A DNA stretch of 64,000 nt from Haplodiscus bocki (taxonomy: Eukaryota), in NCBI GenBank assembly GCA_965655095.1, contig OZ296656.1:71176001-71240000 (forward strand), written 5' to 3'. The notes below the pieces were generated by a model that ran no database searches, had not been told where the DNA came from, and saw nothing but the letters and a program-made list of their open reading frames with translations. Position numbers and translations under genes: made by a program. This document shows positions 26,908 to 64,000 of the stretch, one piece after another. Each line of letters opens with the position of its first letter. The stretch's first letter is position 1.

Positions 26908-26924
26908 AGCCTAATTGTTGTGAT
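26908..26924 (+). repeat. Junction/target 17-mer AGCCTAATTGTTGTGAT, copy 1 (left array boundary)
   Basis: Exact match; preceded by unique flank TAGTTCGCTTTT. Confidence 0.95.
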
Positions 26925-27161
26925 ACTGCTACAGATAAAGATAGCTGTTTGAGCTTGAATCTTGCTTATCGTGACCATATTGCCTGGAGTCTGATTTTTC
27001 AGGATTTCCGGTTACAGTTTTACCATTTCTTTGTGGTGGAAAACATAATCATTCGAAGCTTTACCTCATTGCCTTTCTTGAATCTTTGAACCCGATTCTT
27101 ACTTACATTGCTTCTCGGCTAGCACTTAGTGCTTCCTCTCTTCATTATTCTGGAACGACCA

Positions 27162-28511
27162 ATGGCCCTGCTTAACACCGCCTCTTCTGATATGATGGTA
27201 AACAACTCTCTGACCACGGATCGACAACGTTACTTAACTCCTGAACAACGTGTTCAATTCTATAACCAAGCACCATCGATGAACAACCAAGAACCACAAC
27301 TGCGCAACCAAGAAGAACCACCTCAACTTACCAATGACTACATCACCCAAGCACTTCAACAACCAAGCTACTCGGGCATCGCCTCTAACAACATTCCGCA
27401 ACCAAGAACCATGAATATTCTTAAACTAAAAATCATCCCTCCCTTCAACAAAGACCACTTCGAAACTAAGACAACGTTTGAGACAGCCTCGAATCAATGC
27501 ATTGCTGCGATTCTTCGGCAATTTCCTGTGCAACTAAGAACGAAACTGACTTTATCCAAGACTTTTACTATGGTTGGCACTAGACGACTACACACTCTTC
27601 ACCTTGTGGCACCGAATGAGGCATCAGAAGTAATTACTCGCCTTCATTCTACTGGGATCGAAATGCTGGGCCGAACTGTGATTCCTCAGAGTGACTCCTT
27701 TGAGCGGTTCATCCCAGGCATTTACCCAAAACACGTCCCAGTACGCATACTTCAACTTCCGGCACTTTGTCAAGACCACGAGATTCAAGCACTCCTAGAC
27801 TTACCCGACTCGACTTCTATTACTTCTGTACGGCACCACACTGACGAAATTGACGGTATGAACTTTTATAATGGGCGTGCTTCTGCGATGATCCGTATCA
27901 CGTCCAAAGAACATGAAGAACAACTTAGACAATGGTCCATTACTACTCACGAACATGGGACTCTCCAATGGCATGATATCCCGATCTACGCCTTCATTCC
28001 TGCACTCCACCAATGTACTCACTGCAAAGACCACCGTCGGCCCTTCCATGGTCATGACATTGCCTGGTGTCGCCATGCGAAGGCCGAAGAGCAACAAAGA
28101 CTGACGAATACTATCACTGACTGTAACCAAGTACCTTCCATTCCACCACTTCCAACGAATAACCAAGCCACAATCTCTGAAACTCATGTTCCTGAAACCA
28201 CTACTCCAACGGGTGATGCAACCAATGTGATGACTGAAACTCCTGACGAAACTACTGACAGCAACCAAGACAACCAAGAAGACACTGAAACTACGAGCGA
28301 CGACGATGATGACTCTCAACCATGGCAGACTGCACCTATCCACTCAACCAAGACTCTATCCGCAACCAAGACTCAATCTGCAACCAAGACTCAATCGCAA
28401 CCATGTCCAACTAACACAACCAAGAGGAAAGCACACAACAAAGCACGACTCTTCGCGACGCAGAATCTGCAGACACCTGCTCCCAAGAAGAAAAAGAAGC
28501 CAACGAAATGA
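27162..28511 (+). CDS. E1 ORF1 nucleic-acid-binding protein
   Basis: First ATG at 27162 (the paralogous ATGGAACGAC start reads CTG here). CTHC-x9-H-x4-C knuckle, acidic/Thr tail, PKKKKK C-terminus. Confidence 0.85.
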   Translation: MALLNTASSDMMVNNSLTTDRQRYLTPEQRVQFYNQAPSMNNQEPQLRNQEEPPQLTNDYITQALQQPSYSGIASNNIPQPRTMNILKLKIIPPFNKDHFETKTTFETASNQCIAAILRQFPVQLRTKLTLSKTFTMVGTRRLHTLHLVAPNEASEVITRLHSTGIEMLGRTVIPQSDSFERFIPGIYPKHVPVRILQLPALCQDHEIQALLDLPDSTSITSVRHHTDEIDGMNFYNGRASAMIRITSKEHEEQLRQWSITTHEHGTLQWHDIPIYAFIPALHQCTHCKDHRRPFHGHDIAWCRHAKAEEQQRLTNTITDCNQVPSIPPLPTNNQATISETHVPETTTPTGDATNVMTETPDETTDSNQDNQEDTETTSDDDDDSQPWQTAPIHSTKTLSATKTQSATKTQSQPCPTNTTKRKAHNKARLFATQNLQTPAPKKKKKPTK

Positions 28512-28538
28512 TTTTAGTCTTTGCCTTTTATTTCTTTT

Positions 28539-31500
28539 ATGATGAATGTTTTTTCCTTAAATTGTCGAGGTCTGAAAGACCATAGACGTCTTCAAACTAT
28601 TGTCAATAACTGCATACGAAAACTTTCAGACCTCGACAATCTTTGCATGTGCTTGCAAGAAACTAAGATTTCTAACCTAAGTAATAACCATCTAAAAATC
28701 CTGGCGCACTATCATCTTTCCTATATTCTATATCCTGCTGATGGTCAATCAGGAGGACTCCTCACGATTTTTCCAAAACATTGTACAGTGCTAGGGACAC
28801 ATAAGTCACCTAACACAATAAGTATCCACTTTTCTCAACATACTTTCACATTAACAAACATCTACATCAAACCGACTGACTACCACCTTCAACAATTTCT
28901 ATCAGACATTCTTGTCATCGAGCAATTTCATTGTGAAACTCACATTCTATGTGGTGATTTCAATGCATTACCATCAGCTGACTGCACTTCCAGCTGCCAC
29001 GTTGCAAATAATGATTTTCGACTTCTTAGATATCATCGTATTCTTGACATCCTTCATAATCTTCAGGTGGTACGAGTGGAACCTCACTCATCAATGGCGA
29101 AATTCACACATTTTGACAAGAGAACTAGCTCTGCTAGTCAGATTGATCACTTCTTTACTAGCCAACCCCACTATGTATATAACACAACAAAAATCTCCTT
29201 TTCCGATCATGCTCTTCTTTCTCTAGAAATTTCGAATGTAATTATGACAAGTTCCAGTTACTGGAAACTTAATGACAATGTATTGGTCCATCATGACTAT
29301 ATCACAAGCATCATTTTCGACACTCTGCACTCCTCTCACAATTCCAATAATTTCAATGTACAACATTATGATCGAGTTAAAACCAAAATGAGAGACCATC
29401 TTCGTGCTTTATGCATCTTCTTGCATAAGCAAGCGCTTCATGAAGAGCGATACTTGAATGCCGAAATTTTAAAGCTTGAACATCAAATCTCCAATAATGA
29501 CGTTGACCCTGTTCTGATTAAACAGTTGTCCACTTTAAACTCGCAACTCATGCACTATCAGGGTATGAAAGCGAAAAAAGACTTTAAACAGATCAAACAC
29601 TATTTTACCGATTGTCATCATGGCGACTCACATTCGGTCAAAAAACTTATTTGCTCGCGTCGGCAAAAATCTAACATTGAGTCTCTTGACTTGCCAGATG
29701 GCTCTACCACATCCGACATTGACAACATCTTCTATGAATTTCATCACCACTTTTCTCAACGATTCACACAACCGATCCATACAACTTCCCAACTCTCTGA
29801 CATTGAAAACCTCTTACAACCTTTTCTTAGCACACATTCGAGCGCAATACAAGCTAACATAGCTCAGAATACTCATAACTCGCAGGTAACAGAACAGGAA
29901 GTGGAAGAGGCAATTAAAAAACTTAACTCAGATAGTGCTCCAGGACTAGATGGTTTAACATCTAATTTTTACAAAGCTCATGCAAACTTTTTTACTCCAT
30001 ACTTAACTAATATTTTTAACTTAATGATTTCACATAACTGGGTTCCTGAATCCTTCACACGAACGGTGATTAAGTTAATACCGAAAAAACCGGTTTCGCG
30101 TACGGTCGAGGACTATCGTCCGATTACCCTTATTAACACCGATCAGAAAATTCTCTCGCATCTTCTCGCTAATCGCCTAAAACGATCCTTGACCACTCTC
30201 ATTGGTCCTCACCAAACTGCGTACCTTCCCCAACGGTCAATTCATTCCTCGCTTACCCACGTCAATTTAAACTTAGAATACCTCACTGAGGAGGATTGTC
30301 TAGTTGCCTGTGACTTCAGTAAAGCTTTTGATAAACTCGACCGAACCTATCTTTTTGCTCTCCTACAGCAAATTGGTCTCCATCCAACCACTCTCGGTCT
30401 CATCCAACTCATGTATCACCATACTGATGCTTTTCTTGATATCAACGGTTCGCTATCTCCAGTTGTTAACATAACTAGTGGTGTCCGTCAAGGATGTCCA
30501 CTTTCCTCACTTCTCTTTATTCTTGGCCTCGAACCGTTCTTATTTCATCTCCAACGTAACACCGCCATCCAATCATCGAGTCCTTTCAAAATCATAGCTT
30601 ATGCCGATGATATTACATGTTGTCTTAAAATCAACAGCCTCCAATATCTCTTCGATACTATCAATATTTTCTCGTCGGTCACTAACCTGTATCTGAATCA
30701 ACAGAAAACTGAGATCTTATGTTCCGGCTCACTCCCAAGTGGCTTCCTATCGGTTCCCGCTGTCAAAATCTTAGGTGTTCAGTTTTCAATAAATAACTCA
30801 GCGATTCAACTGAATTCAGCAATCCTGCAGGCAAACAAATCACGGCTTTTCTGTAATCCATATAATACGTTTCTCGCTCGCGCCAAAAACGTTGAGACTT
30901 TGTTATGCAAAAACTCATTCATCAGGTTCGCCATAAATATGTATTGAAAACACAGCTAGAAAGGATTGACAATATCTTTGTTGATTCAATCTGGTTAGGA
31001 CGTAAACATAATATGAAGAAAACGGTTCTCCAAAAACCGTGGGCCTCCATGGGAATTGGTCTTAAAAATTTTACGCAGGTTATCACTGCGGCCAAAACTA
31101 TTGACTACAAGAACTATTTCTACTCGAATCCTACCAGTAATCAATACCGCCTCTTTCGTAATTCGAAACTTTTTTCTAACATGAGACGCTTACTGCGAAC
31201 CTTCAACTGTACACTCAGTTTAGATAATACCTCTCAAATACTTCTCCGTCGATCATCTCAAGTCCTAGTTCTTACTCCACTGACGCGTATTCGCACGGTA
31301 TATCGGTTTCTTAGCTCCACAAATACGCATGATTCTCTATTGCGTCTAACCCAAATAGCGTCTCGCCTCAATTACCCACCCGATCAGATCTTTATGTTTT
31401 TGCGGCGCTTATGGAAACATAAATCGTATGCAGCGTTTGAGAAAAACTATCTCTATCAATTTTTCATGAACTGCTACATGGATAAAACTGTCAAATTTGC

Positions 31501-31783
31501 ACATGGATGGACAGATACTCCTTTCTGTTGTTTCTGTGGCTCTGCCGACGAAACCTTCCACCATCTTTTATCGGAATGTCCGAATATTCCGCATCTGAAC
31601 TTCTTTCCCACAGTAGGTCATCCGCAACTCAACTTCCACCTTCCCAACGACTTTTATCCTTTTAAACGACTCATTGCTCTCCTTATTTGTTCATGGAGCA
31701 ACGACTCACGCAAATTTGCAAAATACTTCATTAACTGTGTGAAACTCAGGCACCCAACCATAAGTTTAAATACTAATCTTTAA
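28539..31783 (+). pseudogene. E1 ORF2 (APE endonuclease + reverse transcriptase + CCHC), 1-nt frameshift near 30900
   Basis: FSLNCRGL, LQET, GDFN, IDHFF, SDH, WKLN, APGLDG, YRPITLINTDQK, DFSKAFD, GVRQGCPLS, YADD, CCFC..ETFHHLLSEC. GAGACTTTG here versus GAGACTTTTG in E7/E8; could be a sequencing error. Confidence 0.88.
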
Positions 31784-31971
31784 GAATGTTAACCTAAGCT
31801 TTCACCATAACCAAGTTTGAATTGTAACCAAGCCTTGTCTGAATTGTAAATACCTTACTCTTAATATAACTAATTTCTGTAAATAATTTCTGTAACTAAT
31901 CATTTGTGTAACTAATCCTTTGTGTAACCAATCATTTGTATAAAGAAACTTCAATGAATTAATTCTTTAAA

Positions 31972-31988
31972 AGCCTAATTGTTGTGAT
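31972..31988 (+). repeat. Junction 17-mer copy 2
   Basis: Exact; preceded by AATTCTTTAAA. Confidence 0.95.
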
Positions 31989-32142
31989 ATTGCTGTGCGA
32001 TTTTGCTTTCGTCAATTCGAACTAGCTTTTACATCACGGTTTCTGCAGTCATTGCAGCTAAACTCTGTGATTCATCGCCTTTACGTTGAATAACGTTGTT
32101 ATTAAACTTACTGTGTATTGATATTACATAATTCATTACATA

Positions 32143-35100
32143 ATGCCAAATTTTCTCAACCACCCACATGTAACGCAAACTTTCCCGAAATATCCATTCT
32201 CTTCTCAAAACAATGCAATTCAACAAACAACATCAACTCTAAATCATCCCCCAAATAGGGGCTATATTCCTCCAGCGGAAAGACTGAGGCTGGCCGCGTT
32301 AGCGGAAGAAATCAACAATCCAAACCCGCAAAACTTCAACCAAAAAGACTTTCCCAACCTCCAAGCCGAGGGACACGGTCCAAGCCAAATCTGCAGCATT
32401 ACTACACCCTCTACAAAAGACGTCCAAGGCAAATCTGATTCTCCGCATGCATCCGAAATGACAAAGAATTCAACAACACCCAACACAGTAACAGAACAGA
32501 ACAAAGAAGTTGCAGCAAATAACTCTTCAAACCCAAATAACTCTTCAGGCCCCAATACAAGCTCCGCGTCAGCTCCGACTCCTGAGTGTATTCAAAACCC
32601 AAACGGAATCGCCCAAACAGATTCCAATACGAATTGCTACAGATCAGCTCTTGGCGTCCAATCTCTACCAGACATACAAAGGATTCTGAAAATGAAGATT
32701 ATCCCCCCTTTTAGAAAAGAACACTTTGAAAATGCTGCTGTATTAGAACGTGAAATTTCAAGAGCGTACTCAGAAATCCTTTTACCTTTTCATCCAAGAC
32801 ACCGTCCTTACATAACTATCTCAAGAACTTTTGAAAAACGAAACAACAAATCGCTCCATACATTACTAGTGACTGCCCCCCAAGAAGCAGAACAAGATGT
32901 CGAAAACATCAAAATCAATGGGCTCCAAATTATGGGGCGAACGGTTTTCCCAACCGGGGAGGACTTCTACCAAATAAGAACATCACAATATCCAAGGAAA
33001 GTTTGGGTACGAATTACTAATTTACCGTATCTCTGCAATGATGTCTCACTAATGGAAATGCTGAACCTACCAAAGCAAATCCAACCTCTCGGGCCCCTCC
33101 AAAGGGAAACCATAAACACTGAATATGGCCAAATCCACAGTGGCAAGGCAAGAATCCAGGTCTCTGTGCCAGATGCCGAATCCATAAACAAACTGAGAGA
33201 GTGGTCCTTTCTAAAAAACGGCCTTGAAATTACACAATGGTGTGACATCCCCATCTACATGTCTGCACCAAGTCTTCATCAATGCACAGCCTGCAAAACC
33301 GAGGGCAGACTCCACGTCGGTCACGATATTCTGTGGTGCAGAATAAACAGAAACAAAATTGATCAAAATGTTACAACACCACCCCAAACCACTGAAGACG
33401 AATCAACTCCAATTGCCATTGAAGAGGACAATATTGCCAGAACCCCCGAAGACCACAATAACAACGGAACTGATCAACAGCAAGGCCAACATGGAACGTC
33501 AGCAGACATACAAAGTGAGGCGGAAGTAGAGAGTGAAAAAGAAGAAAGCGAACCAGAAGAGGAGCAATGGGTAAACAACACTTCTAAAAACAAAAATAAC
33601 TCTGGTATCAAAAGACCCAACCCCCCTTCTGACACATCAGGCACCCCAAGAAAGACCTCCAACAACAAGTTCCAAATCCTTGGCAACTCTTCAGGCGATG
33701 AGACTCCAAATAACAAAGAAAACAAGAAACAAAAAGATACTCAACACACCCGTGTCCAAAAGAAAAAAAACAAAAAACTGTCGATAATGGTGAGAATGGA
33801 TAAAACCTTTGACTTATTCTCCTTTAATGTTAGAGGTTTAGCCTCTCAAAAGGCCAAACTTATCGAGATCTGCAACCTTACTAAAAAACTAAGTAAAAAC
33901 AAAAAATACTTTGTGTTGCTTCAAGAAACAAAACTCGAAAAAATGAAGGAGGAACTTAATAAAATCTTAGAATATCACAATCTGGAGTATGTTATGACTC
34001 CGGCCTATCAAAACTCAGGAGGTTTACTGATCCTTTTCCCCAAAAACTCAAACATCGAAGTACTTGGCAAGACACGATGTTCATTAGTAGTTTTTGATAA
34101 AGAATCCAAAATCGTCATAATGAATATTTACATAAATCCTAAAGATTATTCCCTAGAAATGCTTAAAGCATCAATAGAAGAGCTAAAATTGACACATGAT
34201 CATCAAATAATAATGGCAGGTGACCTCAACTTTATCAACCCTTCGTATACGTCCTCAAACAACATCAAACCAAAATCGATCATAAAACCAAATGACATAC
34301 GAATATTGAGATATAAAAAATTTGTACCTGTCAAATCCAGCCTTCTACTAATAGACCTAGCTCTTCTATTGCAAAACATAGGCCCCACCCATGTTGACAA
34401 AAGACTTGGGAATCATAGTCGTATCGACTACATTTTTAGCAATATAACGAAATTTTCCGTAGATAGCCATAAACTAGATCTTATACCATTTACCTATTCT
34501 GATCACAAAGGCCTACATTTATATGAACTGAATCACACTGAAATCATCCAGCCTCTATGGAAACTAGACAACAATGTGCTCGAACGATCAGAATCAGTAA
34601 ATGATATTCTCCAACATGCAAAAACTGCTAGTAGCAAATTTGGAAACATTGTGTCTTGCCATGACATTTTCAAAGCCAAAGTGAGAGACTGTCTTAAAAC
34701 TCTCAGTGTGAATATCAAACGCTCTAAAGAAGCCGAAATACTTGATATTCAGAATAGGATCACAAAAATTGAAAAAATTTTGCAAAATGCTCAAAATGTA
34801 ACCCTCCCAGAATCTCGTGAAAAACAGTGGAAAAACCTATCTGAACTGGAGCAAAAACTTCAGAAAATAAAAAATATAGAAAACAACAAAGTTGCTAAGC
34901 AAATCAAAGGATTCTTCCGTGAAGCCAACGAAGGCAACCCAAAAATGATAAAACTTTTGGCAAAAAATATAGCCTTAGATAAAGAAATCAAAAAAATCGA
35001 AAAACAAGATGGCTCCTTAACTGAGGACCCCAATGAGATTATCGATGAATTTTTCAACTTTTATAAAACAGTGAGTCAACCAAAATTTGGACAGTCGGAA

Positions 35101-37092: not shown

Positions 37093-37342
37093 GAAAAAAA
37101 AAGAACAAAAAGGAAATTAAATAAAAAAAAAACAAAACAAAACAAAAAACAAAAAAAAAAACTAACAACAAAATACACTACACTACAACACTCATATACA
37201 TGTTGCGGATCTCAAGTGCTTTTTATATTACTTCTCAGTTTTCATTGTTAAATTTGCTTTTACATTATTTTATGTTTATTTTATTTTATTCTTTATTTAA
37301 CAATTTGTTTACATATATACAAGATATAATACATTTTTGAAA

Positions 37343-37359
37343 AGCCTAATTGTTGTGAT
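37343..37359 (+). repeat. Junction 17-mer copy 3
   Basis: Exact; preceded by CATTTTTGAAA. Confidence 0.95.
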
Positions 37360-37522
37360 AACGCCTTTTGATTGTGATAGCTATTACTCGCTTGAATCCT
37401 TGGCTCGCTATTAATTGGCCGTCTCCTGTTGACTCAGGATTCTTGTCAATTTTCACCACATACTATTGTGGTGAAATTATCATTTGGAAATTGGAATTTA
37501 GTTCGCTTTTAGCTTCACAGGA

Positions 37523-38350
37523 ATGGCTAAAGCCGAAGTAATTGTGAAAGATGAAGATACAGAACAAAGACTTCGAAATTGGGCCATGGAATCATACCAA
37601 CTATTCAGAAACTGCCGGAATGCTATATTTCAAGCTTGTGCCTTCAGTATGCTTGAATGCTCTAACTGTAAAGGTGCAAATCTTCAATTTTGTCACCACC
37701 CAAGCCGCTGCAACATTATTTTTGACAATCAACGAAAAGAAAACGAATGTGAAACAAATATTGCAGAAAAAAACAACGCTGATTACGTTATGGAAATCTC
37801 TGGAAATGTAAAACATGGGATTATGGAAAATGATCAGGAAACTATTCTAAGCAATGAAAACTCACCAACAACCAATGCAGAAGAGATGGACAGCAATTCA
37901 GACGAAGAAAGCGACCTAGAAAGTGAAAACGAACCCGCTGAAAAAGCTCAAAAGGCAGAAATTGAAACTACAAATGACGAAATTCAAAAAACATCCGCAA
38001 ATGCTAACCCTAAACAAAATGTGGTACCTTCTACTGCTGTAGTACTTGTTTATGATGCTAAAGCCTTGTGTTCAAAGATACTTCCAACTCAATCTGTCAT
38101 CAAGGACAATCCTCAAATTGAAAAGAAGTTTACAGAAACAAATCCGAAAAACTTTTCAATCGGTGATTTAACATACAATTTGGATTTTAAGCGTATCAAA
38201 ACTAATGATATGAGGAATCTTTTCAAAACACACGCCTGCAGGAAGAAAAACTCGCAAGAAATATACAATAGACACGAAGAAAAGGAAAAAATAATCGGAA
38301 GACTTGATATTTTCTACAATCAAAAAAAACGACAGACTTTATTGTACTAA
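37523..38350 (+). CDS. E3 truncated ORF1-like protein (275 aa)
   Basis: (FTG)MAKAEVIVKDEDTEQRLRNW aligns by eye with ORF1 (FTG)RA..I.....E..LR.W. It has CSNC-x8-H-x4-C and then an acidic region. Confidence 0.65.
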   Translation: MAKAEVIVKDEDTEQRLRNWAMESYQLFRNCRNAIFQACAFSMLECSNCKGANLQFCHHPSRCNIIFDNQRKENECETNIAEKNNADYVMEISGNVKHGIMENDQETILSNENSPTTNAEEMDSNSDEESDLESENEPAEKAQKAEIETTNDEIQKTSANANPKQNVVPSTAVVLVYDAKALCSKILPTQSVIKDNPQIEKKFTETNPKNFSIGDLTYNLDFKRIKTNDMRNLFKTHACRKKNSQEIYNRHEEKEKIIGRLDIFYNQKKRQTLLY

Positions 38351-38691
38351 TCTATATAATGATGTAAAACTTAGATTACAATTCTTTGAACGCTCAAAAC
38401 CCCCTCCTATGACAACTCGCAATTAGTCTTTTTGACCTCACAATTAAAATATCAACCCTATATAACATCTACCAATACCCAAAAAAAAAATTTGCTTTCT
38501 CGCAAACTATCTCGTAGTCCACACTACTATTTTCATTATATTTCATGACCAGTTCCATCTCCATCTTTCTATATAAAAAAAATCATCAGGCTTTTTGGAG
38601 CTAAACTACACTACAAAAATACATAAATTTTTTTCATAATTACTTACTCATTGTACTTGTACATTTATAGTCTCCAAATTTATTCTTTAAA

Positions 38692-38708
38692 AGCCTAATT
38701 GTTGTGAT
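38692..38708 (+). repeat. Junction 17-mer copy 4
   Basis: Exact; preceded by TATTCTTTAAA, followed by AAAC. Confidence 0.95.
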
Positions 38709-38911
38709 AAACATGTTTTTGAACAATGAAAGCTAACCCTCTAGATCTGTAAATCCAGTCGTGAGAAGTTGTTCGATCCATCGAACTCTACGGAGCCTGC
38801 TGGCTAAGTTTGTTACTTGTAACGAACGATAAACCGAGGTAGCTTCTCCCAATCTAAGTGCTGCTAGTTTGTAGAGAGCTAGCCATCAGGCACTGGGTTG
38901 TAACAGAACAT

Positions 38912-39573: not shown

Positions 39574-39700
39574 GTGCTTTTTATATTACTTCTCAGTTTT
39601 CATTGTTAAATTTGCTTTTACATTATTTTATGTTTATTTTATTTTATTCTTTATTTAACAATTTGTTTACATATATACAAGATATAATACATTTTTGAAA

Positions 39701-51372: not shown

Positions 51373-51389
51373 AGCCTAATTGTTGTGAT
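51373..51389 (+). repeat. Junction 17-mer copy 8
   Basis: Exact; preceded by AATTCTTTAAA. Confidence 0.95.
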
Positions 51390-52989: not shown

Positions 52990-53014
52990 TTCTTAACTTT
53001 CTCCTATTTTTGTA

Positions 53015-56000
53015 ATGAATGTCTTCTCTTTGAATTGTCGAGGTCTGAAAGACCATAGACGCCTTCAAATAATTATTAATAATTGCATACGACAACTTTC
53101 AGACCTCGACAATCTTTGCATGTGCTTGCAAGAAACTAAGATTTCTAACCTAAGTAATAACCATCTAAAAATCCTGGCGCACTATCATCTTTCCTATATT
53201 CTATATCCTGCTGATGGTCAATCAGGAGGACTCCTCACGATTTTTCCAAAACATTGTACAGTGCTAGGGACACATAAGTCACCTAACACAATAAGTATCC
53301 ACTTTTCTCAACATACTTTCACATTAACAAACATCTACATCAAACCGACTGACTACCACCTTCAACAATTTCTATCAGACATTCTTGTCATCGAGCAATT
53401 TCATTGTGAAACTCACATTCTATGTGGTGATTTCAATGCGTTACCATCAGCTGACTGCACTTCCAGCTGCCACGTTGCAAATAATGATTTTCGACTTCTT
53501 AGATATCATCGTATTCTTGACATCCTTCATAATCTTCATGTGGTACGTGTTGAACCTCACTCACCATTGACGAAATTCACACATTTTGACAAGAGAACTA
53601 GCTCTGCTAGTCAGATTGATCACTTCTTCACTAGCCAACCCCACTATGTATATAACACAACAAAAATCTCCTTTTCCGATCATGCTCTTCTTTCTCTAGA
53701 AGTCTCGAATGTCACTATGACAAGTTCCAGCTACTGGAAACTTAATGACAATGCATTGATCCATCATGACTATATCACAAGCATCATCTTCGACACTCTG
53801 CACTCCTCTCACAATCCCAATAATTTCGATGTACAACATTATGATCGGGTTAAAACCAAAATGAGAGACCATCTTCGTGCTTTATGCATCTTCTTGCATA
53901 AGCAAGCGCTTCATGAAGAAAGATACTTGACAGCCGAAATTTCAAAACTTGAACATTGCATATCCAATAATGCTGCTGACCCTGTTCTGATTAAACAGTT
54001 GTCCACTTTAAACTCGCAACTCATGCACTATCAAAGTATGCAAGCCACAAAAGACTTTAAACAGATCAAACACTATTTTACCGATTGTCATCATGGCGAC
54101 TCACATTCGGTCAAAAAACTTATTTGCTCGCGTCGGCAAAAATCTAACATTGAATCTCTTGACTTAACAGATGGCTCTACCACATCCAACATTGACAACA
54201 TCTTCTATGAATTCCACCACCACTTTTCTCAACGATTCACACAACCGATCCATACAACTTCCCAACTCTCTGAATTTGCGAACCTCTTACAACCTTTTCT
54301 TAGCACACATTCGAGCGCAATACAAGCTAACATAGCTCAAAATACCCATAACTCGCAGTTAACAGAACAGGAAGTGGAAGAGGCAATTAAAAAACTCAGA
54401 TAGTGCTCCAGGATTAGATGGTTTAACATCTAACTTTTACAAAGCCCATGCAAACTTTTTTATTCCATACTTAACTAACATGTTTAACTTAATGATCTCA
54501 CATAACTGGGTTCCTGGATCCTTCACACGAACGGTGATTAAGTTAATACCGAAAAAACCGGTTTCGCGTACGGTCGAAGACTATCGTCCGATTACTCTTA
54601 TTAACACCGATCAAAAAATTCTCTCGCATCTTCTTGCTAATCGCCTAAAAAAGTCCTTGACCACTCTCATTGGTCCTCACCAAACTGCATACCTTCCCCA
54701 ACGGTCCATTCATTCCTCGCTTACCCACGTCAATTTAAACTTAGAATACCTCACTGAGGAGGATTGTTTAGTTACTTGTGACTTCAGTAAAGCTTTTGAT
54801 GAACTCGACCGAACCTATCTTTTTGCTCTCCTACAACAAATTGGCCTCCATCCGTCCACTCTCGGCCTCATCAAACTCATGCATCACCATACTGACGCAT
54901 TTCTTGATATCAACGGATCGCTATCTCCAGTTGTTAACATAACTAGTGGTGTCCGTCAAGGATGTCCACTTTCCTCGCTCCTCTTTATTCTTGGCCTCGA
55001 ACCGTTCCTATTTCATCTCCAACGTAACACCGCCATCCAATCATCTAGTCCATTCAAAATCATAGCGTACGCCGATGACATTACATGTTGTCTTAAAATC
55101 AACAGCCTCCAATATCTCTTCGATACTATCAATATTTTCTCGTCGGTCACTAACCTGTATCTGAATCAACAGAAAACTGAGATCTTATGTTCTGGCTCAC
55201 TCCCAAGTGGCTTCCTATCAGTTCCCACTGTCCAAATCTTAGGTGTTCAGTTTTCCATAAATAACTCAGCGATTCAACTGAATTCCGCAATCTTGCAGGC
55301 AAACAAATCACGGCTTTTCTGTAATCCATATAATACGTTTCTCGCTCGCGCCAAAAACGTTGAGACTTTTGTTATGCAAAAACTCATTCATCAAGTTCGC
55401 CATAAATATGTATTGAAGACGCAGCTAGAAAGAATTGACAATATCTTTGTTGATTCAATCTGGTTAGGACGTAAACATAATATGAAGAAAACTATTCTCC
55501 AAAAACCATGGGCCTCCATGGGAATTGGTCTTAAAAATTTTACGCAGGTTATCACTGCGGCCAAAATTATTGACTACAAGAATTTTTTCTATTCGAATCC
55601 TACTAGCAATCAGTACCGCCTCTTTCGTAATTCGAAACTTTTCTCTAACATGAGACGCTTACTGCGGACCTTCAACTGTACGCTCAGTTTAGATAATACC
55701 TCTCAAATACTTCTCCGCAGATCATCTCAAGTCTTAGTTCTTACTCCACTGATGCGTACTCGCACGGTCTATCGGTTTCTTAGCTCCACAAATACGCATG
55801 ATTCTCTATTGCGTCTAACCCAAATAGCGTCTCGCCTCAATTACCCACCCGATCAGATCTTTATGTTTTTGCGGCGCTTATGGAAGCATAAATCATATGC
55901 AGCGTTTGAGAAAAACTATCTGTATCAATTTTTCATGAATTGTTACATGGATAAAACTGTTAAATTTGAACATGGATGGACTGAGACTCCTTTCTGTTGT

Positions 56001-56252
56001 TTCTGTGGCTCTGCCGCAGAAACCTTCCACCATCTTTTATCGGAATGTCCGAATATTCCGCATCTGAACTTCTTTCCCACAGTAGGTCATCCGCAACTCA
56101 TCTTCCACCTTCCCAATGACTTTTATCCTTTTAAACGACTCATTGCTCTCCTTATTTGTTCGTGGAGTAACGACTCACGCAAATTTGCAAAATACTTCAT
56201 TAACTGTGTGAAATTCAGGAACCCAACTATAAGTTTATATACTAATCTTTAA
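53015..56252 (+). pseudogene. E8 ORF2 with a 5-nt deletion frameshift near 54395
   Basis: AAAAAACTCAGAT here versus AAAAAACTTAACTCAGAT in E1. Confidence 0.9.
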
Positions 56253-56452
56253 GAATGTTAACCTAAGCTTTTATCATAACCAAGTTTGAATTGTAACTAA
56301 GCCTTGTCTGAATTGTAAATACCTTACTCTTGATATAACTTTCTGGATTTCTAATTTCTGTAACTAATTTCTGTAACTAATCATTTGTGTAACTAATCAT
56401 TTGTGTAACCAATCATTTGTATAAAGATACTTCAATGAATTAATTCTTTAAA

Positions 56453-56469
56453 AGCCTAATTGTTGTGAT
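56453..56469 (+). repeat. Junction 17-mer copy 9
   Basis: Exact; preceded by AATTCTTTAAA. Confidence 0.95.
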
Positions 56470-56792
56470 CGCCTTTGATAAAGAGAGCTTTCCTTGCTTG
56501 AATCGAAGTGATTGTGACCATATTGTGACCATAGATTGGCCAGAATTTCATCTGTGACTTCTATTGGTTACTACTATTCATCACTTTTTGTGGTGAAAAG
56601 TCTTATCATTGAATCGACCTTTACTTCATTCAGCACAGACTTGCAACACAGCAACACAGAATTGCGGCGTGGACTACGGATTCTTCTCTTCTACTTCTGT
56701 GACGTGACTTCTCATTGAAAACTTCTGACACAGCTTTCCCGCTGATTAATACTGATTTTTCATTCAGTATTTCAGCTCAAAATTTTTGAAAA

Positions 56793-58091
56793 ATGGAACG
56801 ACAAATGGCCATGGCAGACGATGTTTCTCTCTACCCCCCTCTCAAAAATAGCTCTTCTGACACAGTTCAACACTACATGACACCTGAACAACGCGTAAAC
56901 TTCTATAATAACCAAGAAATGTCACTTTGCAACCAAGAAAGAACAAACAATGTCAACCAAGAAAACAAGCAACCAAGTTATTCTGGAATTACTTCTCAAA
57001 ACACTCCGCAACCAAGAACAATGAGCATATTGAAACTAAAGATTATTCCCCCCTTTAACAAAGACCACTTCGTAACTAAGACTACCTTTGAAACCGCTTC
57101 CAATCAGTGTATTTCAGCAATCTTACGACAATTTTCCCCGCAACTAAGATCAAAACTCACAATATCCAAGACCTTCACCATAGTAGGAACCCGAAGACTT
57201 CACACTTTCCACATTGTTGCACCAATCGAAGCCTCAGAAGTAATCTCTCGTCTCCAGTCCAGTGGAATTGAAATGCTTGGACGAACAGTCATCCCACGAA
57301 GTGACTCTTTTGAGCGCTATATCCCGGGTATCTACCCAAAACACATCCCAATACGAATCTTACAACTTCCCTCACTCTGCAACGAACAAGACCTTCCTGA
57401 CATTCTTAATTTGCCCGAATCAACACAAATTACATCTCTGCGACACAACACGGAACTGATTGACGGAATGAACTTCTTCAATGGGCGAGCATCGGCCATG
57501 ATTCGAGTGGTGTCAAAGGAACACGAGCAGATGCTACGAGAATGGTCCATTCACAACCACGAAAATGGGACACTTGAATGGAATGGCATTCCAATTTACG
57601 CATTCATACCAGCTCTTCATCAATGTCAGCATTGTAAGAACAACCGTCGGCCGTTCCAAGGACATGATATTGCTTGGTGTAGGTATGCGAAAGATGAAAA
57701 ACAACAAAGTCCAAATAATCTTCCCAACAATCCGAACCAAGCTCTTACACAAAACTGCAACCAAGACGAATCACAACACCACAGCAACCAAGTCACAACA
57801 CCTGAAAACCCTACTAATTCCAACGATGAAACCAACATGACCCAAGATGACGACTCTGAAAGCAACAAAGACCCTGATGGCAATCAAGTAGACATTGAAA
57901 CAAACAGTGACACCGATGATGATATACAACAACCATGGCAAACAACACAACCAAGAAAAACAACAACCGCAACCAAGACACTATCCCAACCAGCCGATTT
58001 CAAGCATACTAAGAGGAAAGCTCGACTTTTTATGGCGAAGAATCTTTCGATTCAAACGCCTGTAACTAAGAAAAAAAAACCTGCGAAATGA
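56793..58091 (+). CDS. E9 ORF1
   Basis: 432 aa; conserved ORF1 motifs; CQHC-x9-H-x4-C. Confidence 0.87.
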   Translation: MERQMAMADDVSLYPPLKNSSSDTVQHYMTPEQRVNFYNNQEMSLCNQERTNNVNQENKQPSYSGITSQNTPQPRTMSILKLKIIPPFNKDHFVTKTTFETASNQCISAILRQFSPQLRSKLTISKTFTIVGTRRLHTFHIVAPIEASEVISRLQSSGIEMLGRTVIPRSDSFERYIPGIYPKHIPIRILQLPSLCNEQDLPDILNLPESTQITSLRHNTELIDGMNFFNGRASAMIRVVSKEHEQMLREWSIHNHENGTLEWNGIPIYAFIPALHQCQHCKNNRRPFQGHDIAWCRYAKDEKQQSPNNLPNNPNQALTQNCNQDESQHHSNQVTTPENPTNSNDETNMTQDDDSESNKDPDGNQVDIETNSDTDDDIQQPWQTTQPRKTTTATKTLSQPADFKHTKRKARLFMAKNLSIQTPVTKKKKPAK

Positions 58092-58112
58092 TCTTTTCTT
58101 ATATTTTCCAAA

Positions 58113-61100
58113 ATGAATGTTTTTTCGTTTAATTGTCGAGGTCTGAAAGACCATCGACGTCTTCAAACAATTGTAAATCAATGTCTCCAAAAACAATCAG
58201 ACCTCGACAATCTTAGCATTTGCTTGCACGAAACTAAGATTACTAATATCACTAACAACCATCTAAAAATCCTGGAGCACTATCACCTTTCATATCATAT
58301 ATATCCATCGGAAGGTCAATCTGGAGGACTGCTAACGATTTTTCCAGAAAAATACAAAATGCTCAACATGCATAAATCATCAAACACAATAAGTATCCAC
58401 TTTTCTCAACACAACTTCACACTAACAAACACATACATTAAACCGACTGACTACCAACTCCAACAATTTTTATCGGATACTCTTGCTATTGAAAACTTCG
58501 AATGCAACACTCACGTCATATGTGGTGACATCAACGCGCTCCCATCATCTAGCTGCACATCTAATCGTAATGTGGCAAATAATGACTTCCGTCTTCTCAG
58601 ATATCATCGTATTATTGACATTCTCCATAATCTTCATGTAGTACATGTTGAACCTGCATCTCCATCAACAAGATTCACGCATTTTGATAAAAGATCTAGC
58701 TCTTCCAGTCAAATTGACCATTTTTTCACTAGTCAATCTCACTATGTCTATGAGACCACAAAAATTTCTTTCTCCGATCATGCCCTTCTCTCTCTTAGAC
58801 CTTCCAACGTAGTTATGACAAGTACTAGCTATTGGAAACTTAACGACAATGCACTGCAACACTATGCTTATATAGCAACCATTATCACAGAATCCCTACA
58901 AACGTCTCATGATCTAAATAATTCCCACTTACACCATTATGATCTTGTTAAAAATACCATGAGAGACCGTCTTCGTTCTCTATGCATTTTCCTACATCGA
59001 CAAGCAGTTCATGAAGAGAGATTTTTAATAGCAGAAATGTCAAAGGTAGAAAATGAAATCTCTAATAATGGTGCAGACACTGTTCTGATTAAACAGTTAT
59101 CAACTCAACTCACAATTCCTTAATTACCAAAATATGAAAGCCAAAAAAGATTTCAAACAAATCAAACAATATTTTACAGATTGTCATCATGGAGATTCAC
59201 ACTCTGTCAGAAAACTCCTCTGCTCACGTCGACAAAAATCAAACATTGAATCAATTGACCTACCAGACGGTTCCTCCACATTCAACATTGACAGTATCTT
59301 CCATGAATTCCACAACCATTTCTCTCAACGATTCACACAATCAACTCACACAACATCAGATACGACCTCTCATCTCTCCAACATTAACAACATTCTACAA
59401 TCATTTCTCACAACACATTGGCATGCGATACAAGATAATATTGCTCAAAATACCCATCATTCACAAATAACAGAACAAGAAGTAGAAGAAGCAATTAAAA
59501 AACTTAACTCAGATAGTGCTCTAGGATTAGATGGTTTAACATCTAACTTCTATAAAGCAAATGCAATTTTTTTTGTTCCGTACTTAACTACTATATTTAA
59601 CTTGATAATTATTTATAATTGGGTTCGTGAATCCTTCACAAGAACAGTGATTAAACTAATTCCGAAAAAACCGTTTCCACGTATGGTCGAAGACTATCGT
59701 CCGATTAGCCTTATTAACACTGATCAAAAGATTCTCTCTCATCTCCTTGCTAATCGCCTCAAAAGCTCCCTGACCAGTCTTATTGGCTCTCACCAAACTG
59801 CTTACCTCCCTCAACGCTCAATTCACTCCTCGCTTACCCAAGTTAATCTAAACTTAGAACAACTCACTGATGAGGATTGTCTTGTTGCTTGTGATTTTAG
59901 CAAAGCTTTTGATAAACTCGACCGAACCTATCTTTTTGCTCTTCTAGAGCAAATTGGCCTCCATCCGTCCACGCTTGGTATCATCAAAACAATGTATCAC
60001 CATACTGATGCATTTCTTGATATAAATGGATCGCTATCTCCAATTATTAATATGACTAACGGTGTCCGTCAGGGCTGTCCACTTTCTCTTCTTTTTATTC
60101 TTGGCATTGAACCTTTCCTGTTTCATCTCCAGAAAAATACTTCCATTCTATCAACTAGTCCTTTCAAAATCATAGCCTATGCAGATGACATTACATGTTG
60201 TCTTAAAATCAACAGCCTCCAACATCTCTTCTATACTATCAACACTTTCTCTTCAGTTACCAATCTCTATCTTAATCTACAGAAGACTGAGATCTTATGC
60301 TCTGGATCACTTCCAAATGGTTTCGTTTCGGTTCCTTCTATCAAAATTTTAGGTGTGGAGTTTTCCTTGAACAATTTTAGCAATTCAAATGAATTCGGCA
60401 ATCTTGCAAGCACACAAATCACGAATGTTTTGCAACCCATATAATACCTTTCTTGCTAGAGCCAAAAACATTGAAACATTTGTTATGCATAAACTCATTC
60501 ATCAAATTCGACATAAATATGTATTAAAGACGCAGCTCGAAAGAATTGATAATATCTTAGTTGATTCAATCTGGTTAGGACGTAAACACAATCTGAAAAA
60601 AACTATCCTCCAAAAACCATGGGTCTCCATGGGAATTGGTCTTAAAAATTTTACACAGGTTATCACTGCGGCCAAAACCATTGACTATGAAAATTTTCTT
60701 TACTCAAATCCTACTAGTAATCAATATAACTTTTTTCGTCATTGTAAACTTTTCTCTAATTTGAGACGCCTATTGCGAACTTTCAACTGTACCCTCAATA
60801 CAGATAATTCTTCTCAAGTCGCTCTCCGCAAATCATCTCATACCCTCATTCTCACTCCATGAACGCGTACTCGTGAAGTTTATCGTTTCATTAGCTCCAC
60901 TAATACTCATGAATCTGTCTCGCGTCTAACACAACTTGCGTCTCGCCTCAACTATCCACCAGACTTAATCTTTTTATTTCTGCGGCGCCTATGGAAACAT
61001 AAAGCATATGCAGCATTTGAGAAAAATTATCTCTACCAATTTTTCATGAATTGTTACATGGACAAAAGCATTAAATTCCAACATGGATGGAGTGACACTC

Positions 61101-61363
61101 CCTTCTGCTGTTTCTGCGGCTCTGCTGAAGAAACTTTTCACCACTTACTCTCCGAATGTACCAACATTCCTCATTTGAATTTCTTTCCAACAATAGGCCA
61201 TCCGCAGTTAAACTTCCAAAATTCAACTGACATATATCCTTTCAAACGACTCATTGCGCTACTCATTTGCTCGTGGAGTAACGACTCACATAAATTTCGA
61301 AAATACTTTGTAAATTGTGTGAGGCTCAGGAACCCAACTATTAGTCTACATATTAATACATAA
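58113..61363 (+). pseudogene. E9 ORF2 with multiple frameshifts and a nonsense codon
   Basis: ORF pieces 58113-59123, 59134-60444, 60389-60862 and 61046-61363 are collinear with E7 ORF2. Confidence 0.9.
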
Positions 61364-61540
61364 AAACTTAAGACTATGCCCTCAACATAACCAAGCCCTT
61401 GAACATTACAATGGATTTTTTTGTTAACTTAGATTTTTTCAATAAATTATTCGAATGTTTGATTGCTTGATTTATGATGCCTTACTTTGATTTGTTTATT
61501 TGATTTGATTTAGAGCACTTAAATGAATTAATTCTTTATA

Positions 61541-61557
61541 AGCCTAATTGTTGTGAT
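61541..61557 (+). repeat. Junction 17-mer copy 10
   Basis: Exact; preceded by AATTCTTTATA. Confidence 0.95.
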
Positions 61558-61896
61558 CGCTTATGATAAAGATAGCTTTCCTTGCTTGAATCGAAGTGAT
61601 CTTGACGATATTGTGACCATAGATTGGCCAGAATTCCATCTGTGACTTCTATTGGTTACTACTATTCATCACTTTTTGTGGTGAAAAACCTTATCTTTGA
61701 ATCAACCTGCAACTTCAGCATTCTTTCATTCTTCAGCACAGACTTGCAACTCAGCAACACAGACTTGCGGCGTGGACTACGGATTCTTCTCTTCGACTTC
61801 TGTGACGTGACTTCTCATTGAAAACTTCTCACACAGCTTTCCCGCTGATTAATACTGAATTTTCATTCAGTATTTCAGCTCAAAAATTTTTGAAAA

Positions 61897-63157
61897 ATGG
61901 AACGACAAATGGCCCTGACTGACAATGTTTCCTTCTACCCCCCCTCTCAATAATGGCTCTTCTGACACGGTTCAACACTACATGACACCTGAACAACGCG
62001 TAAACTTCTACAATAACCAAGAAATGTCACTTTACAACCAAGAAACAACAAACAATGTCAACCAAGAAATAATGAAACCAAGTTATTCTGGAATTGCGTC
62101 GAACAATGTACCACCACCAAGAATTACGAACTTTTTAAAACTCAAGATCATTCCTCCATTCAACAAAGAGCATTTTGTAACAAAGAACACATTCGAATCG
62201 GCTTCCAATCAATGTATTGCTACAATCCTAAGACAATTCTCTCCGGAACAACGAACAAAAATTACTCTGTCCAACACTTTTACGATTGTTGGAACCCGGC
62301 GCCTGCATACATTTCATCTTGTTGCACCCACTGAGGCCGCGAGTACTGTTGAACGGTTACTATCTTCTGGAATCGAGTTACTTGGGAGAACTGTGTTCCC
62401 CCAAAGTGACTCATTTGAACGGTGTATCCCTGGGATCTATCCAAAGTTTGTCCACATTCGCATCTTGCAATTACCATCAATTTGCCAGGATGACGAACTG
62501 TCCGACCTCCTCCAACTTCCTGACTCAACGCAAATTACCTCGGTAAAGCACAATACAGAGGTATCAGCAATGATTCGTGTGGTATCCAAAGACCATGAAG
62601 AGGAACTAAGACAATGGTCAATCAGGAATCATGAGAATGGAAATCTGCAATGGCATGATATCCCAATTTATGCATTCATCCCTGCGTTGCACCAGTGCCA
62701 GCACTGTAAGGACAACAAACGACCTTTCCATGGGCATGACATTGCATGGTGTCGCCATGCAAGAGACGAAACGCAACAAAGAACAACAATTACCACAAAT
62801 GACTGCAACCAAGAAGAACAAGTTTCACTCGGCAACCAAGCAACTATTCATGAAGTCTCCATTCCTGCTACTGGAGAAACCAATGACATTAACATGAACC
62901 AAGATAACACTTCTGATAGCAACCAAGATAACAATGACAACCAAGAAGAAATCGAAGCTAACACCGAAACTGATGATGAACCTCAGAACCAATGGCAAAC
63001 AGCGCAACCAAGACATACAACAACAGCAACCAAGTCTCAGTCACAACCACCCAATCTCAAGCAGACTAAAAGGAAAGCGGACAAAGCTCGACTTTTTATG
63101 ACCAAGAATTTTTCGACTCATACGCCTGTAACTAAGAGGAAAAAACCTGCAAAATAA
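61897..63157 (+). pseudogene. E10 ORF1 (+1 C in a poly-C run near the start; about 10-codon internal deletion)
   Basis: ATGGAACGAC at 61897 is out of frame with the main ORF; lacks the IDGMNFFNGR segment. Confidence 0.75.
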
Positions 63158-63180
63158 TCTTTTTTCTTTCATGATTCCAA

Positions 63181-64000
63181 ATGAATGTTTTCTCTTTAAA
63201 TTGTCGAGGTCTGAAAGACCATCGACGTCTTCAAATAATTGTGAATCAATATCTAAAACACTCAGACCTCGACAATCTTTGCATTTGCTTGCAAGAAACT
63301 AAGATTTCTAATATAACTAATAACCATCTAAAAATCCTGGAGCACTATCACCTTTCATACAATATATATCCATCAGAAGGTCAATCTGGGGGACTTCTGA
63401 CAATTTTTCCAGAAAACTACATACTGCTCAACTCGTATAAATCATCAAACACAATAAGTCTCCACTTTTCTCAACATAATTACACAATAACTAATACATA
63501 CATCAAACCGACTGACTACCACCTCCAACAATTTTTATCGGATATTCTTGTTATTGAAAACTTTCAATGCAATACTCACGTCATTTGTGGAGACTTCAAC
63601 GCCCTCCCATCATCTGACTGCACTTCCAATCGTCATGTGCCACATAATGACTTCCGTCTTCTCAGATATCATCGTATTATTGACATTCTTCAAAATCTTC
63701 ATGTTGTACGTGTTGAAGCTCAATCACCATCAACTAAATTCACACATTTTGATAAAAGATGTAACTCTTCCAGTCAAATTGACCACTTTTTCACTAACCA
63801 ACCTCACTTTGTCTATGAGACAACCAAAATCTCTTTCTCTGATCATGCTCTTCTTTCTCTTGTTATTTCCAATGTAGCTATGACTGGTACCAGCTACTGG
63901 AAACTTAATGATAATGCATTGCAACATCATGCCTATATAGCAAGCATTCTCTCGGATTCCCTACAAATGTCTCACAATCAGAGTAATTTGCACTTGCACT
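63181..64000 (+). CDS. E10 ORF2 N-terminus (APE endonuclease), partial
   Basis: MNVFSLNCRGLKDHRRLQ...LQET...GDFN...IDHFF...SDH...WKLN, running off the window. Confidence 0.85.
   Translation, partial: MNVFSLNCRGLKDHRRLQIIVNQYLKHSDLDNLCICLQETKISNITNNHLKILEHYHLSYNIYPSEGQSGGLLTIFPENYILLNSYKSSNTISLHFSQHNYTITNTYIKPTDYHLQQFLSDILVIENFQCNTHVICGDFNALPSSDCTSNRHVPHNDFRLLRYHRIIDILQNLHVVRVEAQSPSTKFTHFDKRCNSSSQIDHFFTNQPHFVYETTKISFSDHALLSLVISNVAMTGTSYWKLNDNALQHHAYIASILSDSLQMSHNQSNLHLH

What the first reader, a model, noticed from the sequence alone, without database searches (positions are those of the whole stretch)
26908..64000. Self-perpetuating head-to-tail array of site-specific L1/Tx1 retrotransposons joined by an invariant 17-bp target
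Seen: more than 37 kb made only of same-strand non-LTR elements abutting end to start. AGCCTAATTGTTGTGAT is exact at all 10 boundaries (26908, 31972, 37343, 38692, 39701, 41051, 46304, 51373, 56453, 61541), and I saw it nowhere else. No unit is nested inside another. Known: target-primed reverse transcription (TPRT) duplicates the target, and some Tx1-clade APE elements are sequence-specific for multicopy RNA genes or repeats. Inference: the 17-mer is the target-site duplication (TSD). Each insertion leaves two usable targets, so one site grows into a retrotransposon 'parking array' beside a housekeeping gene without damaging resident elements.
Basis: partly seen in the sequence, partly recalled or inferred. 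Interest (0 to 1): 0.92.

Follow-up and report, generated by a model that had tools for sequence, protein, structure and literature searches.

The report
LINEs stacked inside spliced-leader RNA genes
The repeated 17 bases are the first 17 bases of an acoel worm's spliced-leader RNA gene, and the array is a pile-up of L1-like jumping genes that insert only at the start of that gene and duplicate those 17 bases each time, a known lifestyle with a target that is new for this type of element.

Summary
The 17-mer is exact at all 10 window sites. All units lie on the + strand, head to tail, and the run continues for at least 137 kb.

The 17-mer is not private to the array. The genome holds 1,420 copies, and it is nt 1-17 of the 32-nt spliced-leader (SL) exon published for the acoel Symsagittifera roscoffensis. 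About 640 intact SL genes lie in SL+5S tandem repeats 1.2 Mb away on the same chromosome. Each array here starts at a diverged SL promoter.

Single insertions in two other assemblies show a true 17-bp target-site duplication:
- The layout is promoter + SL1-17 + element + complete SL gene.
- One case has the same variant base in both flanks.
- One 5'-truncated copy still carries the 17-mer.

The elements encode an AP endonuclease and a reverse transcriptase, are L1-like, and form one acoel clade with several deep lineages. Tx1 membership was not tested.

"Two usable targets" is doubtful: none of 21 exact 3' junctions lies at the ~318 dispersed SL retrocopies. The arrays were also remodelled by duplication and deletion.

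SL-gene targeting is described for restriction-like-endonuclease LINEs, and TSD-separated arrays for Drosophila R1. The scan reached the same reading on adjacent DNA.

The parts
21010..26486 (+). Spacer upstream of the orphan SL promoter. Together with the promoter it is duplicated at 99.7% identity 52 kb to the right, at the head of the second array.
   Evidence: only two full copies in the genome, and it holds small dispersed repeats
26487..26907 (+). Diverged spliced-leader RNA gene promoter, 74% identical to the canonical SL+5S unit upstream region. It ends in GCTTTT directly before SL nt +1.
26908..31971 (+). Unit 1: SL nt 1-17, then a lineage-1 element. ORF1 is open; ORF2 (APE+RT) is split once. 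The 3' end reads ...AATTCTTTAAA.
31972..37342 (+). Unit 2: SL nt 1-17, then a lineage-2 element with one open 1,656-codon frame (ORF1-like part, APE, RT, CCHC). ORF2 is 33% identical to lineage 1.
37343..38691 (+). Unit 3: SL nt 1-17, then a 1.35-kb non-autonomous unit. It has a 158-bp 5' UTR of an autonomous family, 1.2 kb of unrelated sequence with a 275-aa ORF, and the shared 3' motif.
38692..39700 (+). Unit 4: SL nt 1-17, then a chimeric fragment. It joins 218 bp of the lineage-3 5' end, a lineage-1 RT piece, and 127 bp of the lineage-2 3' end.
39701..41050 (+). Unit 5: second copy of the 1.35-kb non-autonomous unit. It is part of the local duplication 37216-38909 to 39574-41268.
41051..46303 (+). 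Unit 6: SL nt 1-17 (the match to SL runs to nt 21), then a lineage-3 element. ORF1 is present and ORF2 is split into two frames.
46304..51372 (+). Unit 7: SL nt 1-17, then a lineage-1 element with both frames open (ORF1 459 and ORF2 1,036 codons). It shows APE motifs, YADD and a C-terminal CCHC.
51373..56452 (+). Unit 8: SL nt 1-17, then a lineage-1 element with ORF2 split once.
56453..61540 (+). Unit 9: SL nt 1-17, then a lineage-1 subfamily (79% aa identity to unit 7) with ORF2 in several pieces.
61541..64000 (+). Unit 10: SL nt 1-17, then a lineage-1 subfamily element cut by the window end. It runs to 66602 in the extended sequence.

Best explanation
The array is a stack of spliced-leader (SL) RNA gene-specific non-LTR retrotransposons of the L1 group, carrying an N-terminal AP-type endonuclease, a reverse transcriptase and a C-terminal CCHC. 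Shown: every element lies in the orientation of the SL gene. Its 3' end (conserved ...ATTCTTTAAA-like, no poly(A) tail) abuts SL nt +1. Its 5' end follows SL nt 17 or 18. SL nt 1-17 is duplicated as a 17-bp TSD. Inferred: the endonuclease nicks the bottom strand exactly at the SL transcription start (-1/+1), and reverse transcription is primed there. The top strand is cut 17 nt downstream. An inserted element therefore sits directly behind the SL promoter plus a 17-nt leader and can be transcribed from it, while the displaced complete SL gene loses its promoter. Repeated insertion into the same gene gives head-to-tail units separated only by the 17-mer. Local duplication, unequal exchange and deletion then remodel the stack. 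The three arrays studied here sit in diverged orphan SL genes 1.2 Mb from the main SL+5S array.
For: The 17-mer equals nt 1-17 of the SL exon: the genome has 986 full SL copies, 668 of them followed by GT, and 619 with the promoter end and the intron start. The published S. roscoffensis SL matches (PMC9911081). SL units carry 5S rRNA. SL promoter homology lies directly left of 26908, 79342 and 149602. Single insertions with both junctions occur in two other assemblies. L071 has junctions at 8675 and 13395. L076 has junctions at 8345 and 13435, and both flanks share the variant AGCCTAAATG.... A 5'-truncated copy at L072:5353 still follows promoter + 17-mer. In this genome, 20 of 21 '3' end + full SL' junctions continue into the SL intron. 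An internal unit, 138823-144008 in extended coordinates, is flanked by the same variant 17-mer on both sides. APE and RT domains are present. Human L1 ORF2p is the best solved relative, E = 6e-51 over EN and RT. All acoel elements form one clade with 100% SH-aLRT support, and it includes every element shown to sit in an SL gene. The 3' terminal motif is conserved between lineages that share only 33% ORF2 identity.
Against: No RNA data were available, so transcription from the SL promoter is an inference. The nick positions are deduced from junctions and were not assayed. The >100-kb arrays are seen in one assembly only, and the public runs gave only 150-370-nt unitigs that break at the 17-mer. 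Twelve of the 48 best ORF2 matches lie on other chromosomes without an exact 17-mer nearby where the lists let me check. Comparable older copies in another assembly do sit in decayed SL gene arrays. Array 1 does not end in the rest of an SL gene; it ends in a 435-bp 5' fragment joined to a duplicated spacer.
Confidence: 0.9

Rival explanations
1. The 17-mer is simply the element's own 5' (or 3') terminus. On this view the arrays are satellite-like tandem amplifications of ordinary, non-specific LINEs.
For: Local tandem duplications do exist: an 8,985-bp repeat, at least five 1.76-kb units, and the 37216-38909 duplicate. A 3'-truncated unit is fused exactly to the first base of a 17-mer at 68111. 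One 5' UTR holds three tandem partial SL copies at 95194. Both fit the RNA itself carrying the 17-mer.
Against: A copy truncated inside the RT still has promoter + 17-mer. The 3' flank continues into SL nt 18-32 and the intron at 20 sites. The first unit of each array follows an SL promoter. At least three lineages with about 33% ORF2 identity and unrelated 5' UTRs share the same 17-mer.
Confidence: 0.03
2. The 17-mer comes from trans-splicing. Element RNAs received the spliced leader before reverse transcription, as many other LINE families of this genome did.
For: Hundreds of dispersed loci carry the full 32-nt SL directly in front of diverse TE-like sequences.
Against: Only nt 1-17 or 1-18 are present here, never the full leader ending in AG. 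The sequence to the left is the SL gene promoter and the sequence to the right is the complete SL gene with its intron. A DNA-level insertion explains this; splicing does not.
Confidence: 0.02
3. The long arrays are mainly an assembly artefact, with collapsed or mis-joined repeats. Only single insertions in SL genes would then be real.
For: No long read was available, and the unitigs break at each 17-mer. Near-identical blocks (99.7% D/D', 99.8% 11-kb repeat) are the kind of sequence that assemblers mis-place.
Against: Neighbouring units belong to different lineages and subfamilies with unique 5' UTRs, which is hard to produce by collapse. A second assembly shows two elements in tandem before a decayed SL gene (L074). 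An 8-nt deleted 5' junction and other junction variants look biological.
Confidence: 0.07
4. The arrays grow chiefly by unequal exchange between the 17-mers or between homologous elements. A few double insertions would start them, as proposed for the Drosophila R1 array.
For: Repeated blocks whose boundaries fall within units, units with the same variant 17-mers in series (156258-163289), and duplicated promoter+spacer blocks. The R1 precedent is in PMC5932611.
Against: Array 1 alone holds about eight different elements from three deep lineages, which needs many independent insertions.
Confidence: 0.35

Closest known systems
SL-gene-specific non-LTR retrotransposons CRE1/CRE2, SLACS and CZAR (trypanosomatids) and NeSL-1 (nematodes)
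   Same: They insert site-specifically into the spliced-leader exon of tandem SL RNA genes, in the gene's orientation, so the element lies behind the SL promoter. The target class is named in PMC4640811; the orientation and promoter details are from my own knowledge.
   Different: Those elements carry a restriction-like endonuclease C-terminal to the RT and belong to early-branching clades. The elements here have an N-terminal AP-type endonuclease and group with L1. The hosts are unrelated (kinetoplastids and nematodes versus an acoel), so the shared target is convergent.
Tx1-clade target-specific APE LINEs (Tx1L, Keno, Dewa, Mutsu, Kibi, Koshi)
   Same: They are APE-type, L1-group elements that target multicopy small RNA genes or repeats. 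The Tx1 clade is named as one of three groups of target-specific LINEs in PMC4640811; the individual family names are from my own knowledge.
   Different: Their recorded targets are U2 snRNA, 5S rRNA, a DNA transposon and microsatellites, not SL genes. Membership of the acoel clade in Tx1 was not tested, because no labelled Tx1 reference was at hand.
Drosophila melanogaster R1 tandem array
   Same: Head-to-tail site-specific APE LINEs are separated only by a short duplicated piece of the target (33 nt of 28S rDNA). This is explained by double insertion into one target followed by unequal exchange (PMC5932611).
   Different: The R1 array is essentially one family expanded to about a megabase. 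Here several deep lineages and many subfamilies alternate, so many independent insertions are needed. The target is an SL gene and the spacer is the 17-bp TSD.
Human L1 ORF2p
   Same: It is the best solved relative over endonuclease and RT (E = 6e-51). It has the same domain order and a C-terminal Cys-rich motif.
   Different: Human L1 has a loose target preference, a poly(A) tail and variable TSDs. Here the site is fixed, the 3' end is a fixed ...TTCTTTAAA with no poly(A), and the TSD is a fixed 17 bp.

Membership tests
L1-group APE-type non-LTR retrotransposon | N-terminal AP-like endonuclease followed by a reverse transcriptase in ORF2 | tested here: met
   Pfam Exo_endo_phos and RVT_1 appear in that order in three lineages. 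YADD and a C-terminal CCHC are present.
L1-group APE-type non-LTR retrotransposon | Closest relatives are L1-type rather than R2, jockey or CR1-type | tested here: met
   Human L1 ORF2p scores E = 6e-51 over EN and RT, against 3e-19 for R2 over RT only. The nearest named outgroups are Anolis and Equus L1.
Tx1 clade | RT phylogeny places the element inside Tx1 with labelled Tx1 references | not tested
   No labelled Tx1 sequence was available in the tools. The tree shows only a separate acoel clade beside L1-like sequences.
Target-specific LINE | Independent insertions at the same nucleotide position of the same target, with a TSD | tested here: met
   L071, L072, L073 and L076 show both junctions, and 20 genomic sites show the 3' junction. 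Both flanks share a variant base in L076.
CRE/SLACS/CZAR/NeSL (SL-specific RLE elements) | Restriction-like endonuclease domain C-terminal to the RT, with no APE | tested here: not met
   An APE domain is present at the N-terminus, and only a CCHC motif follows the RT. The elements work like this family but are not members.
Spliced-leader RNA gene (the target) | Exon identical to the leader found on mRNAs, followed by a GT donor | tested here: met
   The 32-nt exon matches the published S. roscoffensis leader. GT follows it in 668 copies.
Spliced-leader RNA gene (the target) | Tandem multicopy organisation, often linked to 5S rRNA | tested here: met
   Units of 1.7-2.6 kb lie at C9:72.47 Mb. 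5S rRNA is found in the SL units of three assemblies.
Spliced-leader RNA gene (the target) | Sm-binding site and SL RNA fold | not tested
   A U-rich stretch followed by a GC stem is visible, but it was not folded or modelled here.
TSD-separated tandem TE array (R1 type) | Head-to-tail units separated only by target-derived sequence of TSD length | tested here: met
   About 43 junctions carry the 17-mer and nothing else between the 3' end and the next 5' UTR.

The most novel reading that the evidence does not exclude
The insertion point at the exact transcription start makes a 'last in, first transcribed' stack. Each new element would land between the SL promoter and the older elements and capture the snRNA-type promoter and a 17-nt leader. 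It would push older copies out of expression. The leader would travel with the RNA at the 5' end, and by read-through at the 3' end, and would guide both junctions by annealing to the nicked SL gene. Four hints support this: dispersed SL exons are never hit; unit integrity falls from left to right in array 1; a 3'-truncated unit is fused exactly to base 1 of a 17-mer; and SL relics lie inside 5' UTRs.
Probability: 0.3. Interest if true: 0.7.

Novelty: new variant of a known kind. Interest (0 to 1): 0.56.

Why it matters
Spliced-leader genes were known as a safe-harbour target only for LINEs with a restriction-like endonuclease, in trypanosomatids and nematodes. An old, diversified clade of AP-endonuclease, L1-like LINEs in an acoel has evolved the same target independently. 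This shows that the niche is found again whenever trans-splicing creates a multicopy SL locus.

The clade also offers a natural L1-type endonuclease with single-site specificity for study. The insertion point at the transcription start, the fixed 17-bp TSD and the multi-lineage stacks give a clean system. With it one could ask how APE-type LINEs read a target, how they obtain a promoter, and how TE pile-ups turn into satellite-like arrays.

Tried and rejected
- **Read support.** Only Logan unitigs of 150-370 nt were available. They break at the 17-mer and neither confirm nor refute the long-range order. No RNA run was listed.
- **Rfam at gathering thresholds on the window.** No hits, so no known ribozyme (HDV-like, hammerhead) was detected at unit starts.
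- **Pfam on ORF1 and on the 275-aa ORF of the short unit.** No family was found.
- **Protein atlas.** It returned only unnamed RVT/APE clusters and did not help to tell L1 from Tx1.
- **Right end of array 1.** No SL nt 18-32 or intron lies within 164 kb. Array 1 ends in a rearrangement.
- **Copies on other chromosomes.** For the same reason their flanks were not read.
- **Growth polarity.** The longest ORF2 frame falls from left to right in array 1, and the last element of array 2 is the most decayed. Array 2 as a whole shows no trend, so I do not claim a direction.
- **'Element terminus' and 'trans-spliced leader' readings.** I considered both and rejected them (see the rival explanations).
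Full report
**1. Observation**

The 17-mer AGCCTAATTGTTGTGAT is exact at the ten stated positions, always on the + strand. Chance expectation is 0.02 hits. Each interval holds + strand coding sequence for an AP-type endonuclease plus reverse transcriptase, for an ORF1-like protein, or a short derivative. I fetched 100 kb to the right of the window. The run goes on to at least 164000 in extended coordinates, with 34 exact junctions and about 9 slightly mutated ones and none on the minus strand.

**2. What the 17-mer is**

- The genome (1.5 Gb) holds 1,420 copies of the 17-mer. In most dispersed copies it continues as one 32-nt sequence ending in AG, followed by unrelated sequences.
- The same 32-mer followed by GT occurs 668 times. 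Most of these lie in a tandem array of 1.7-2.6-kb units at C9:72.47 Mb, 1.2 Mb right of the window. Each unit also carries a 5S rRNA gene.
- A full-text search found the 3' half of the 32-mer in the genome paper of the acoel Symsagittifera roscoffensis. That paper gives this sequence as the trans-spliced leader (PMC9911081).
- The 17-mer is therefore nt 1-17 of the spliced-leader (SL) exon.
- The 420 bp left of 26908 are 74% identical to the region upstream of canonical SL genes and end in the same GCTTTT. The same block heads a second array at 79342, and a 90% identical promoter heads a third at 149602.

**3. The 17-mer is a target-site duplication**

Relatives of the ORF2 protein led to contigs of two other public assemblies.

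- **L071:** an element lies in one unit of a regular SL+5S array. The promoter and SL nt 1-16 are followed by the element 5' end at 8675. The element 3' end is followed by the complete SL exon and intron at 13395.
- **L076:** an element with both frames open is flanked on both sides by the same variant, AGCCTAAATG.... On the left it follows the promoter; on the right it continues into SL nt 18-32 and the intron. The shared variant shows that one flank is a copy of the other.
- **L072:** a copy truncated inside the RT still follows promoter + 17-mer, so the 17-mer is target, not element terminus. Another copy has an 8-nt deletion at the 5' junction, the usual untidiness of 5' joining.
- **This genome:** 21 sites join the element 3' end to a full SL, and 20 of them continue into the intron. 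There are 619 uninterrupted SL genes with promoter end and intron start.
- **Inside the arrays:** unit 138823-144008 is flanked on both sides by the same variant 17-mer.

From the junctions I infer a bottom-strand nick at -1/+1, which is the SL transcription start, and a top-strand cut after nt 17 or 18. These nick positions are deduced from sequence, not assayed.

**4. The elements**

- ORF2 has Exo_endo_phos and RVT_1 domains, YADD and a C-terminal CCHC. ORF1 has no Pfam family.
- Human L1 ORF2p is the best solved relative, with E = 6e-51 over both the endonuclease and the RT. R2 proteins match the RT only.
- In a maximum-likelihood tree of 40 ORF2 proteins all acoel sequences form one clade with 100% SH-aLRT support. 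A 20-member subclade (99%) holds the three window lineages and every element that I saw inside an SL gene.
- The window lineages share only 31-34% ORF2 identity, so the specificity is old.
- Their 3' ends nevertheless share a terminal motif of about 10 nt...ATTCTTTAAA and close variants, without a poly(A) tail.
- I could not test whether the clade belongs to Tx1, because no labelled Tx1 reference was available.

**5. Anatomy of the arrays**

- **Array 1 (26908-73440):** about eight full-length elements of three lineages plus short units. Two elements have all frames open (31972-37342 and 46304-51372). The others carry one to several frame breaks.
- **Rearrangements:**
  - 37216-38909 is duplicated at 39574-41268.
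  - An 8,985-bp block is repeated at 112329-132323.
  - At least five 1.76-kb ORF1-only units follow 154940.
  - A 3'-truncated unit is fused exactly to base 1 of the 17-mer at 68111.
- **End of array 1:** it does not end in the rest of an SL gene. It ends in a 435-bp 5' fragment joined to a 99.7% copy of window 21010-26907, which is spacer plus promoter. This block exists only twice in the genome.
- **Conclusion:** growth is by repeated insertion and also by local duplication and deletion.

**6. Is the 17-mer alone a sufficient target?**

About 318 full SL copies are dispersed retrocopies without a GT. If the exon alone were enough, about a third of insertions should lie there. None of the 21 exact 3' junctions does: all are in the C9 SL region or on unplaced contigs that carry several such junctions. 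My own binomial arithmetic gives 0.68 to the power 21, about 3e-4. Context beyond the exon therefore seems to matter. That context could be the promoter, the intron or active transcription. 'Two usable targets per insertion' is unproven.

Integrity falls from left to right in array 1, and the last element of array 2 is the most decayed. This hints at insertion next to the promoter, but array 2 as a whole shows no trend.

**7. Limits**

- The public runs gave only short unitigs that break at the 17-mer, so the long-range order rests on one assembly.
- No RNA data were available.
- Twelve of the 48 best ORF2 matches lie on other chromosomes. Older copies in another assembly sit in decayed SL gene arrays, so these may too.

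**8. Comparison with what is known**

- SL exons are a listed target of site-specific LINEs (PMC4640811). The known cases (CRE, SLACS, CZAR, NeSL) carry a restriction-like endonuclease.
- My literature searches found no AP-endonuclease LINE that targets SL genes and nothing on this in acoels.
- Head-to-tail arrays separated by a duplicated piece of target are described for Drosophila R1 and are explained by double insertion plus unequal exchange (PMC5932611).
- The finding is therefore a new target for this endonuclease class and a new host group, within a known lifestyle.
- Earlier notes of this scan reached the same reading on adjacent DNA.

Noticed in passing
L001-L030 (dispersed loci on C1): The full 32-nt spliced leader sits directly in front of many unrelated repeated sequences. 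Several families recur (for example L003/L006/L012/L018 and L023/L026/L028). These look like retrocopies of trans-spliced RNAs. L016 and L031 carry a partial SL relic just upstream of a full SL.
   Followed up: partly
L076:13622-18515: A minus-strand element of the sister acoel clade (P0072 type) is inserted between the SL RNA gene and the 5S gene of an SL+5S unit. The flanks overlap by about 17 bp of canonical unit sequence (positions 770-786), which suggests a second insertion site in the same repeat.
   Followed up: partly
window 4871-10975 (- strand): ORF pieces with AAA_5 (dynein-related AAA) domains, probably exons of a midasin-like or similar large AAA ATPase gene. It is the only host gene seen left of the array.
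   Followed up: partly
window 37343-38691 and 39701-41050: A 1.35-kb unit combines the first 158 bp of an autonomous element's 5' UTR, 1.2 kb of otherwise unique sequence with a 275-aa ORF of no known family, and the shared 3' motif. It may be a non-autonomous passenger or a transduced host sequence.
   Followed up: partly
window 32122-37092: The lineage-2 element has one continuous 1,656-codon frame in which the ORF1-like part is fused to ORF2. Relatives in the protein database have a separate ORF2 of about 1,098 aa.
   Followed up: no
extended sequence 95194-95240 (31 kb right of the window end): One element starts with three tandem partial copies of the SL 5' part. Other 5' UTRs contain a degenerate SL-like stretch (...GATTGTGATAGCT). 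These are possible relics of leaders carried by the RNA.
   Followed up: partly
L035-L060 (C9:72.47 Mb): Canonical SL+5S units differ in length by multiples of about 168 bp (1732, 1900, 2068, 2236, 2404, 2572 bp). The cause is a variable number of a spacer subrepeat.
   Followed up: no
L075:5945, 11415, 16744, 18155: This is a divergent SL-like gene family. The exon starts GGCCGAATTG..., and the sequence after nt 24 differs from the canonical SL. The copies are in tandem and are also occupied by elements of this clade. One 3' junction lies 7 nt upstream of the usual position.
   Followed up: no
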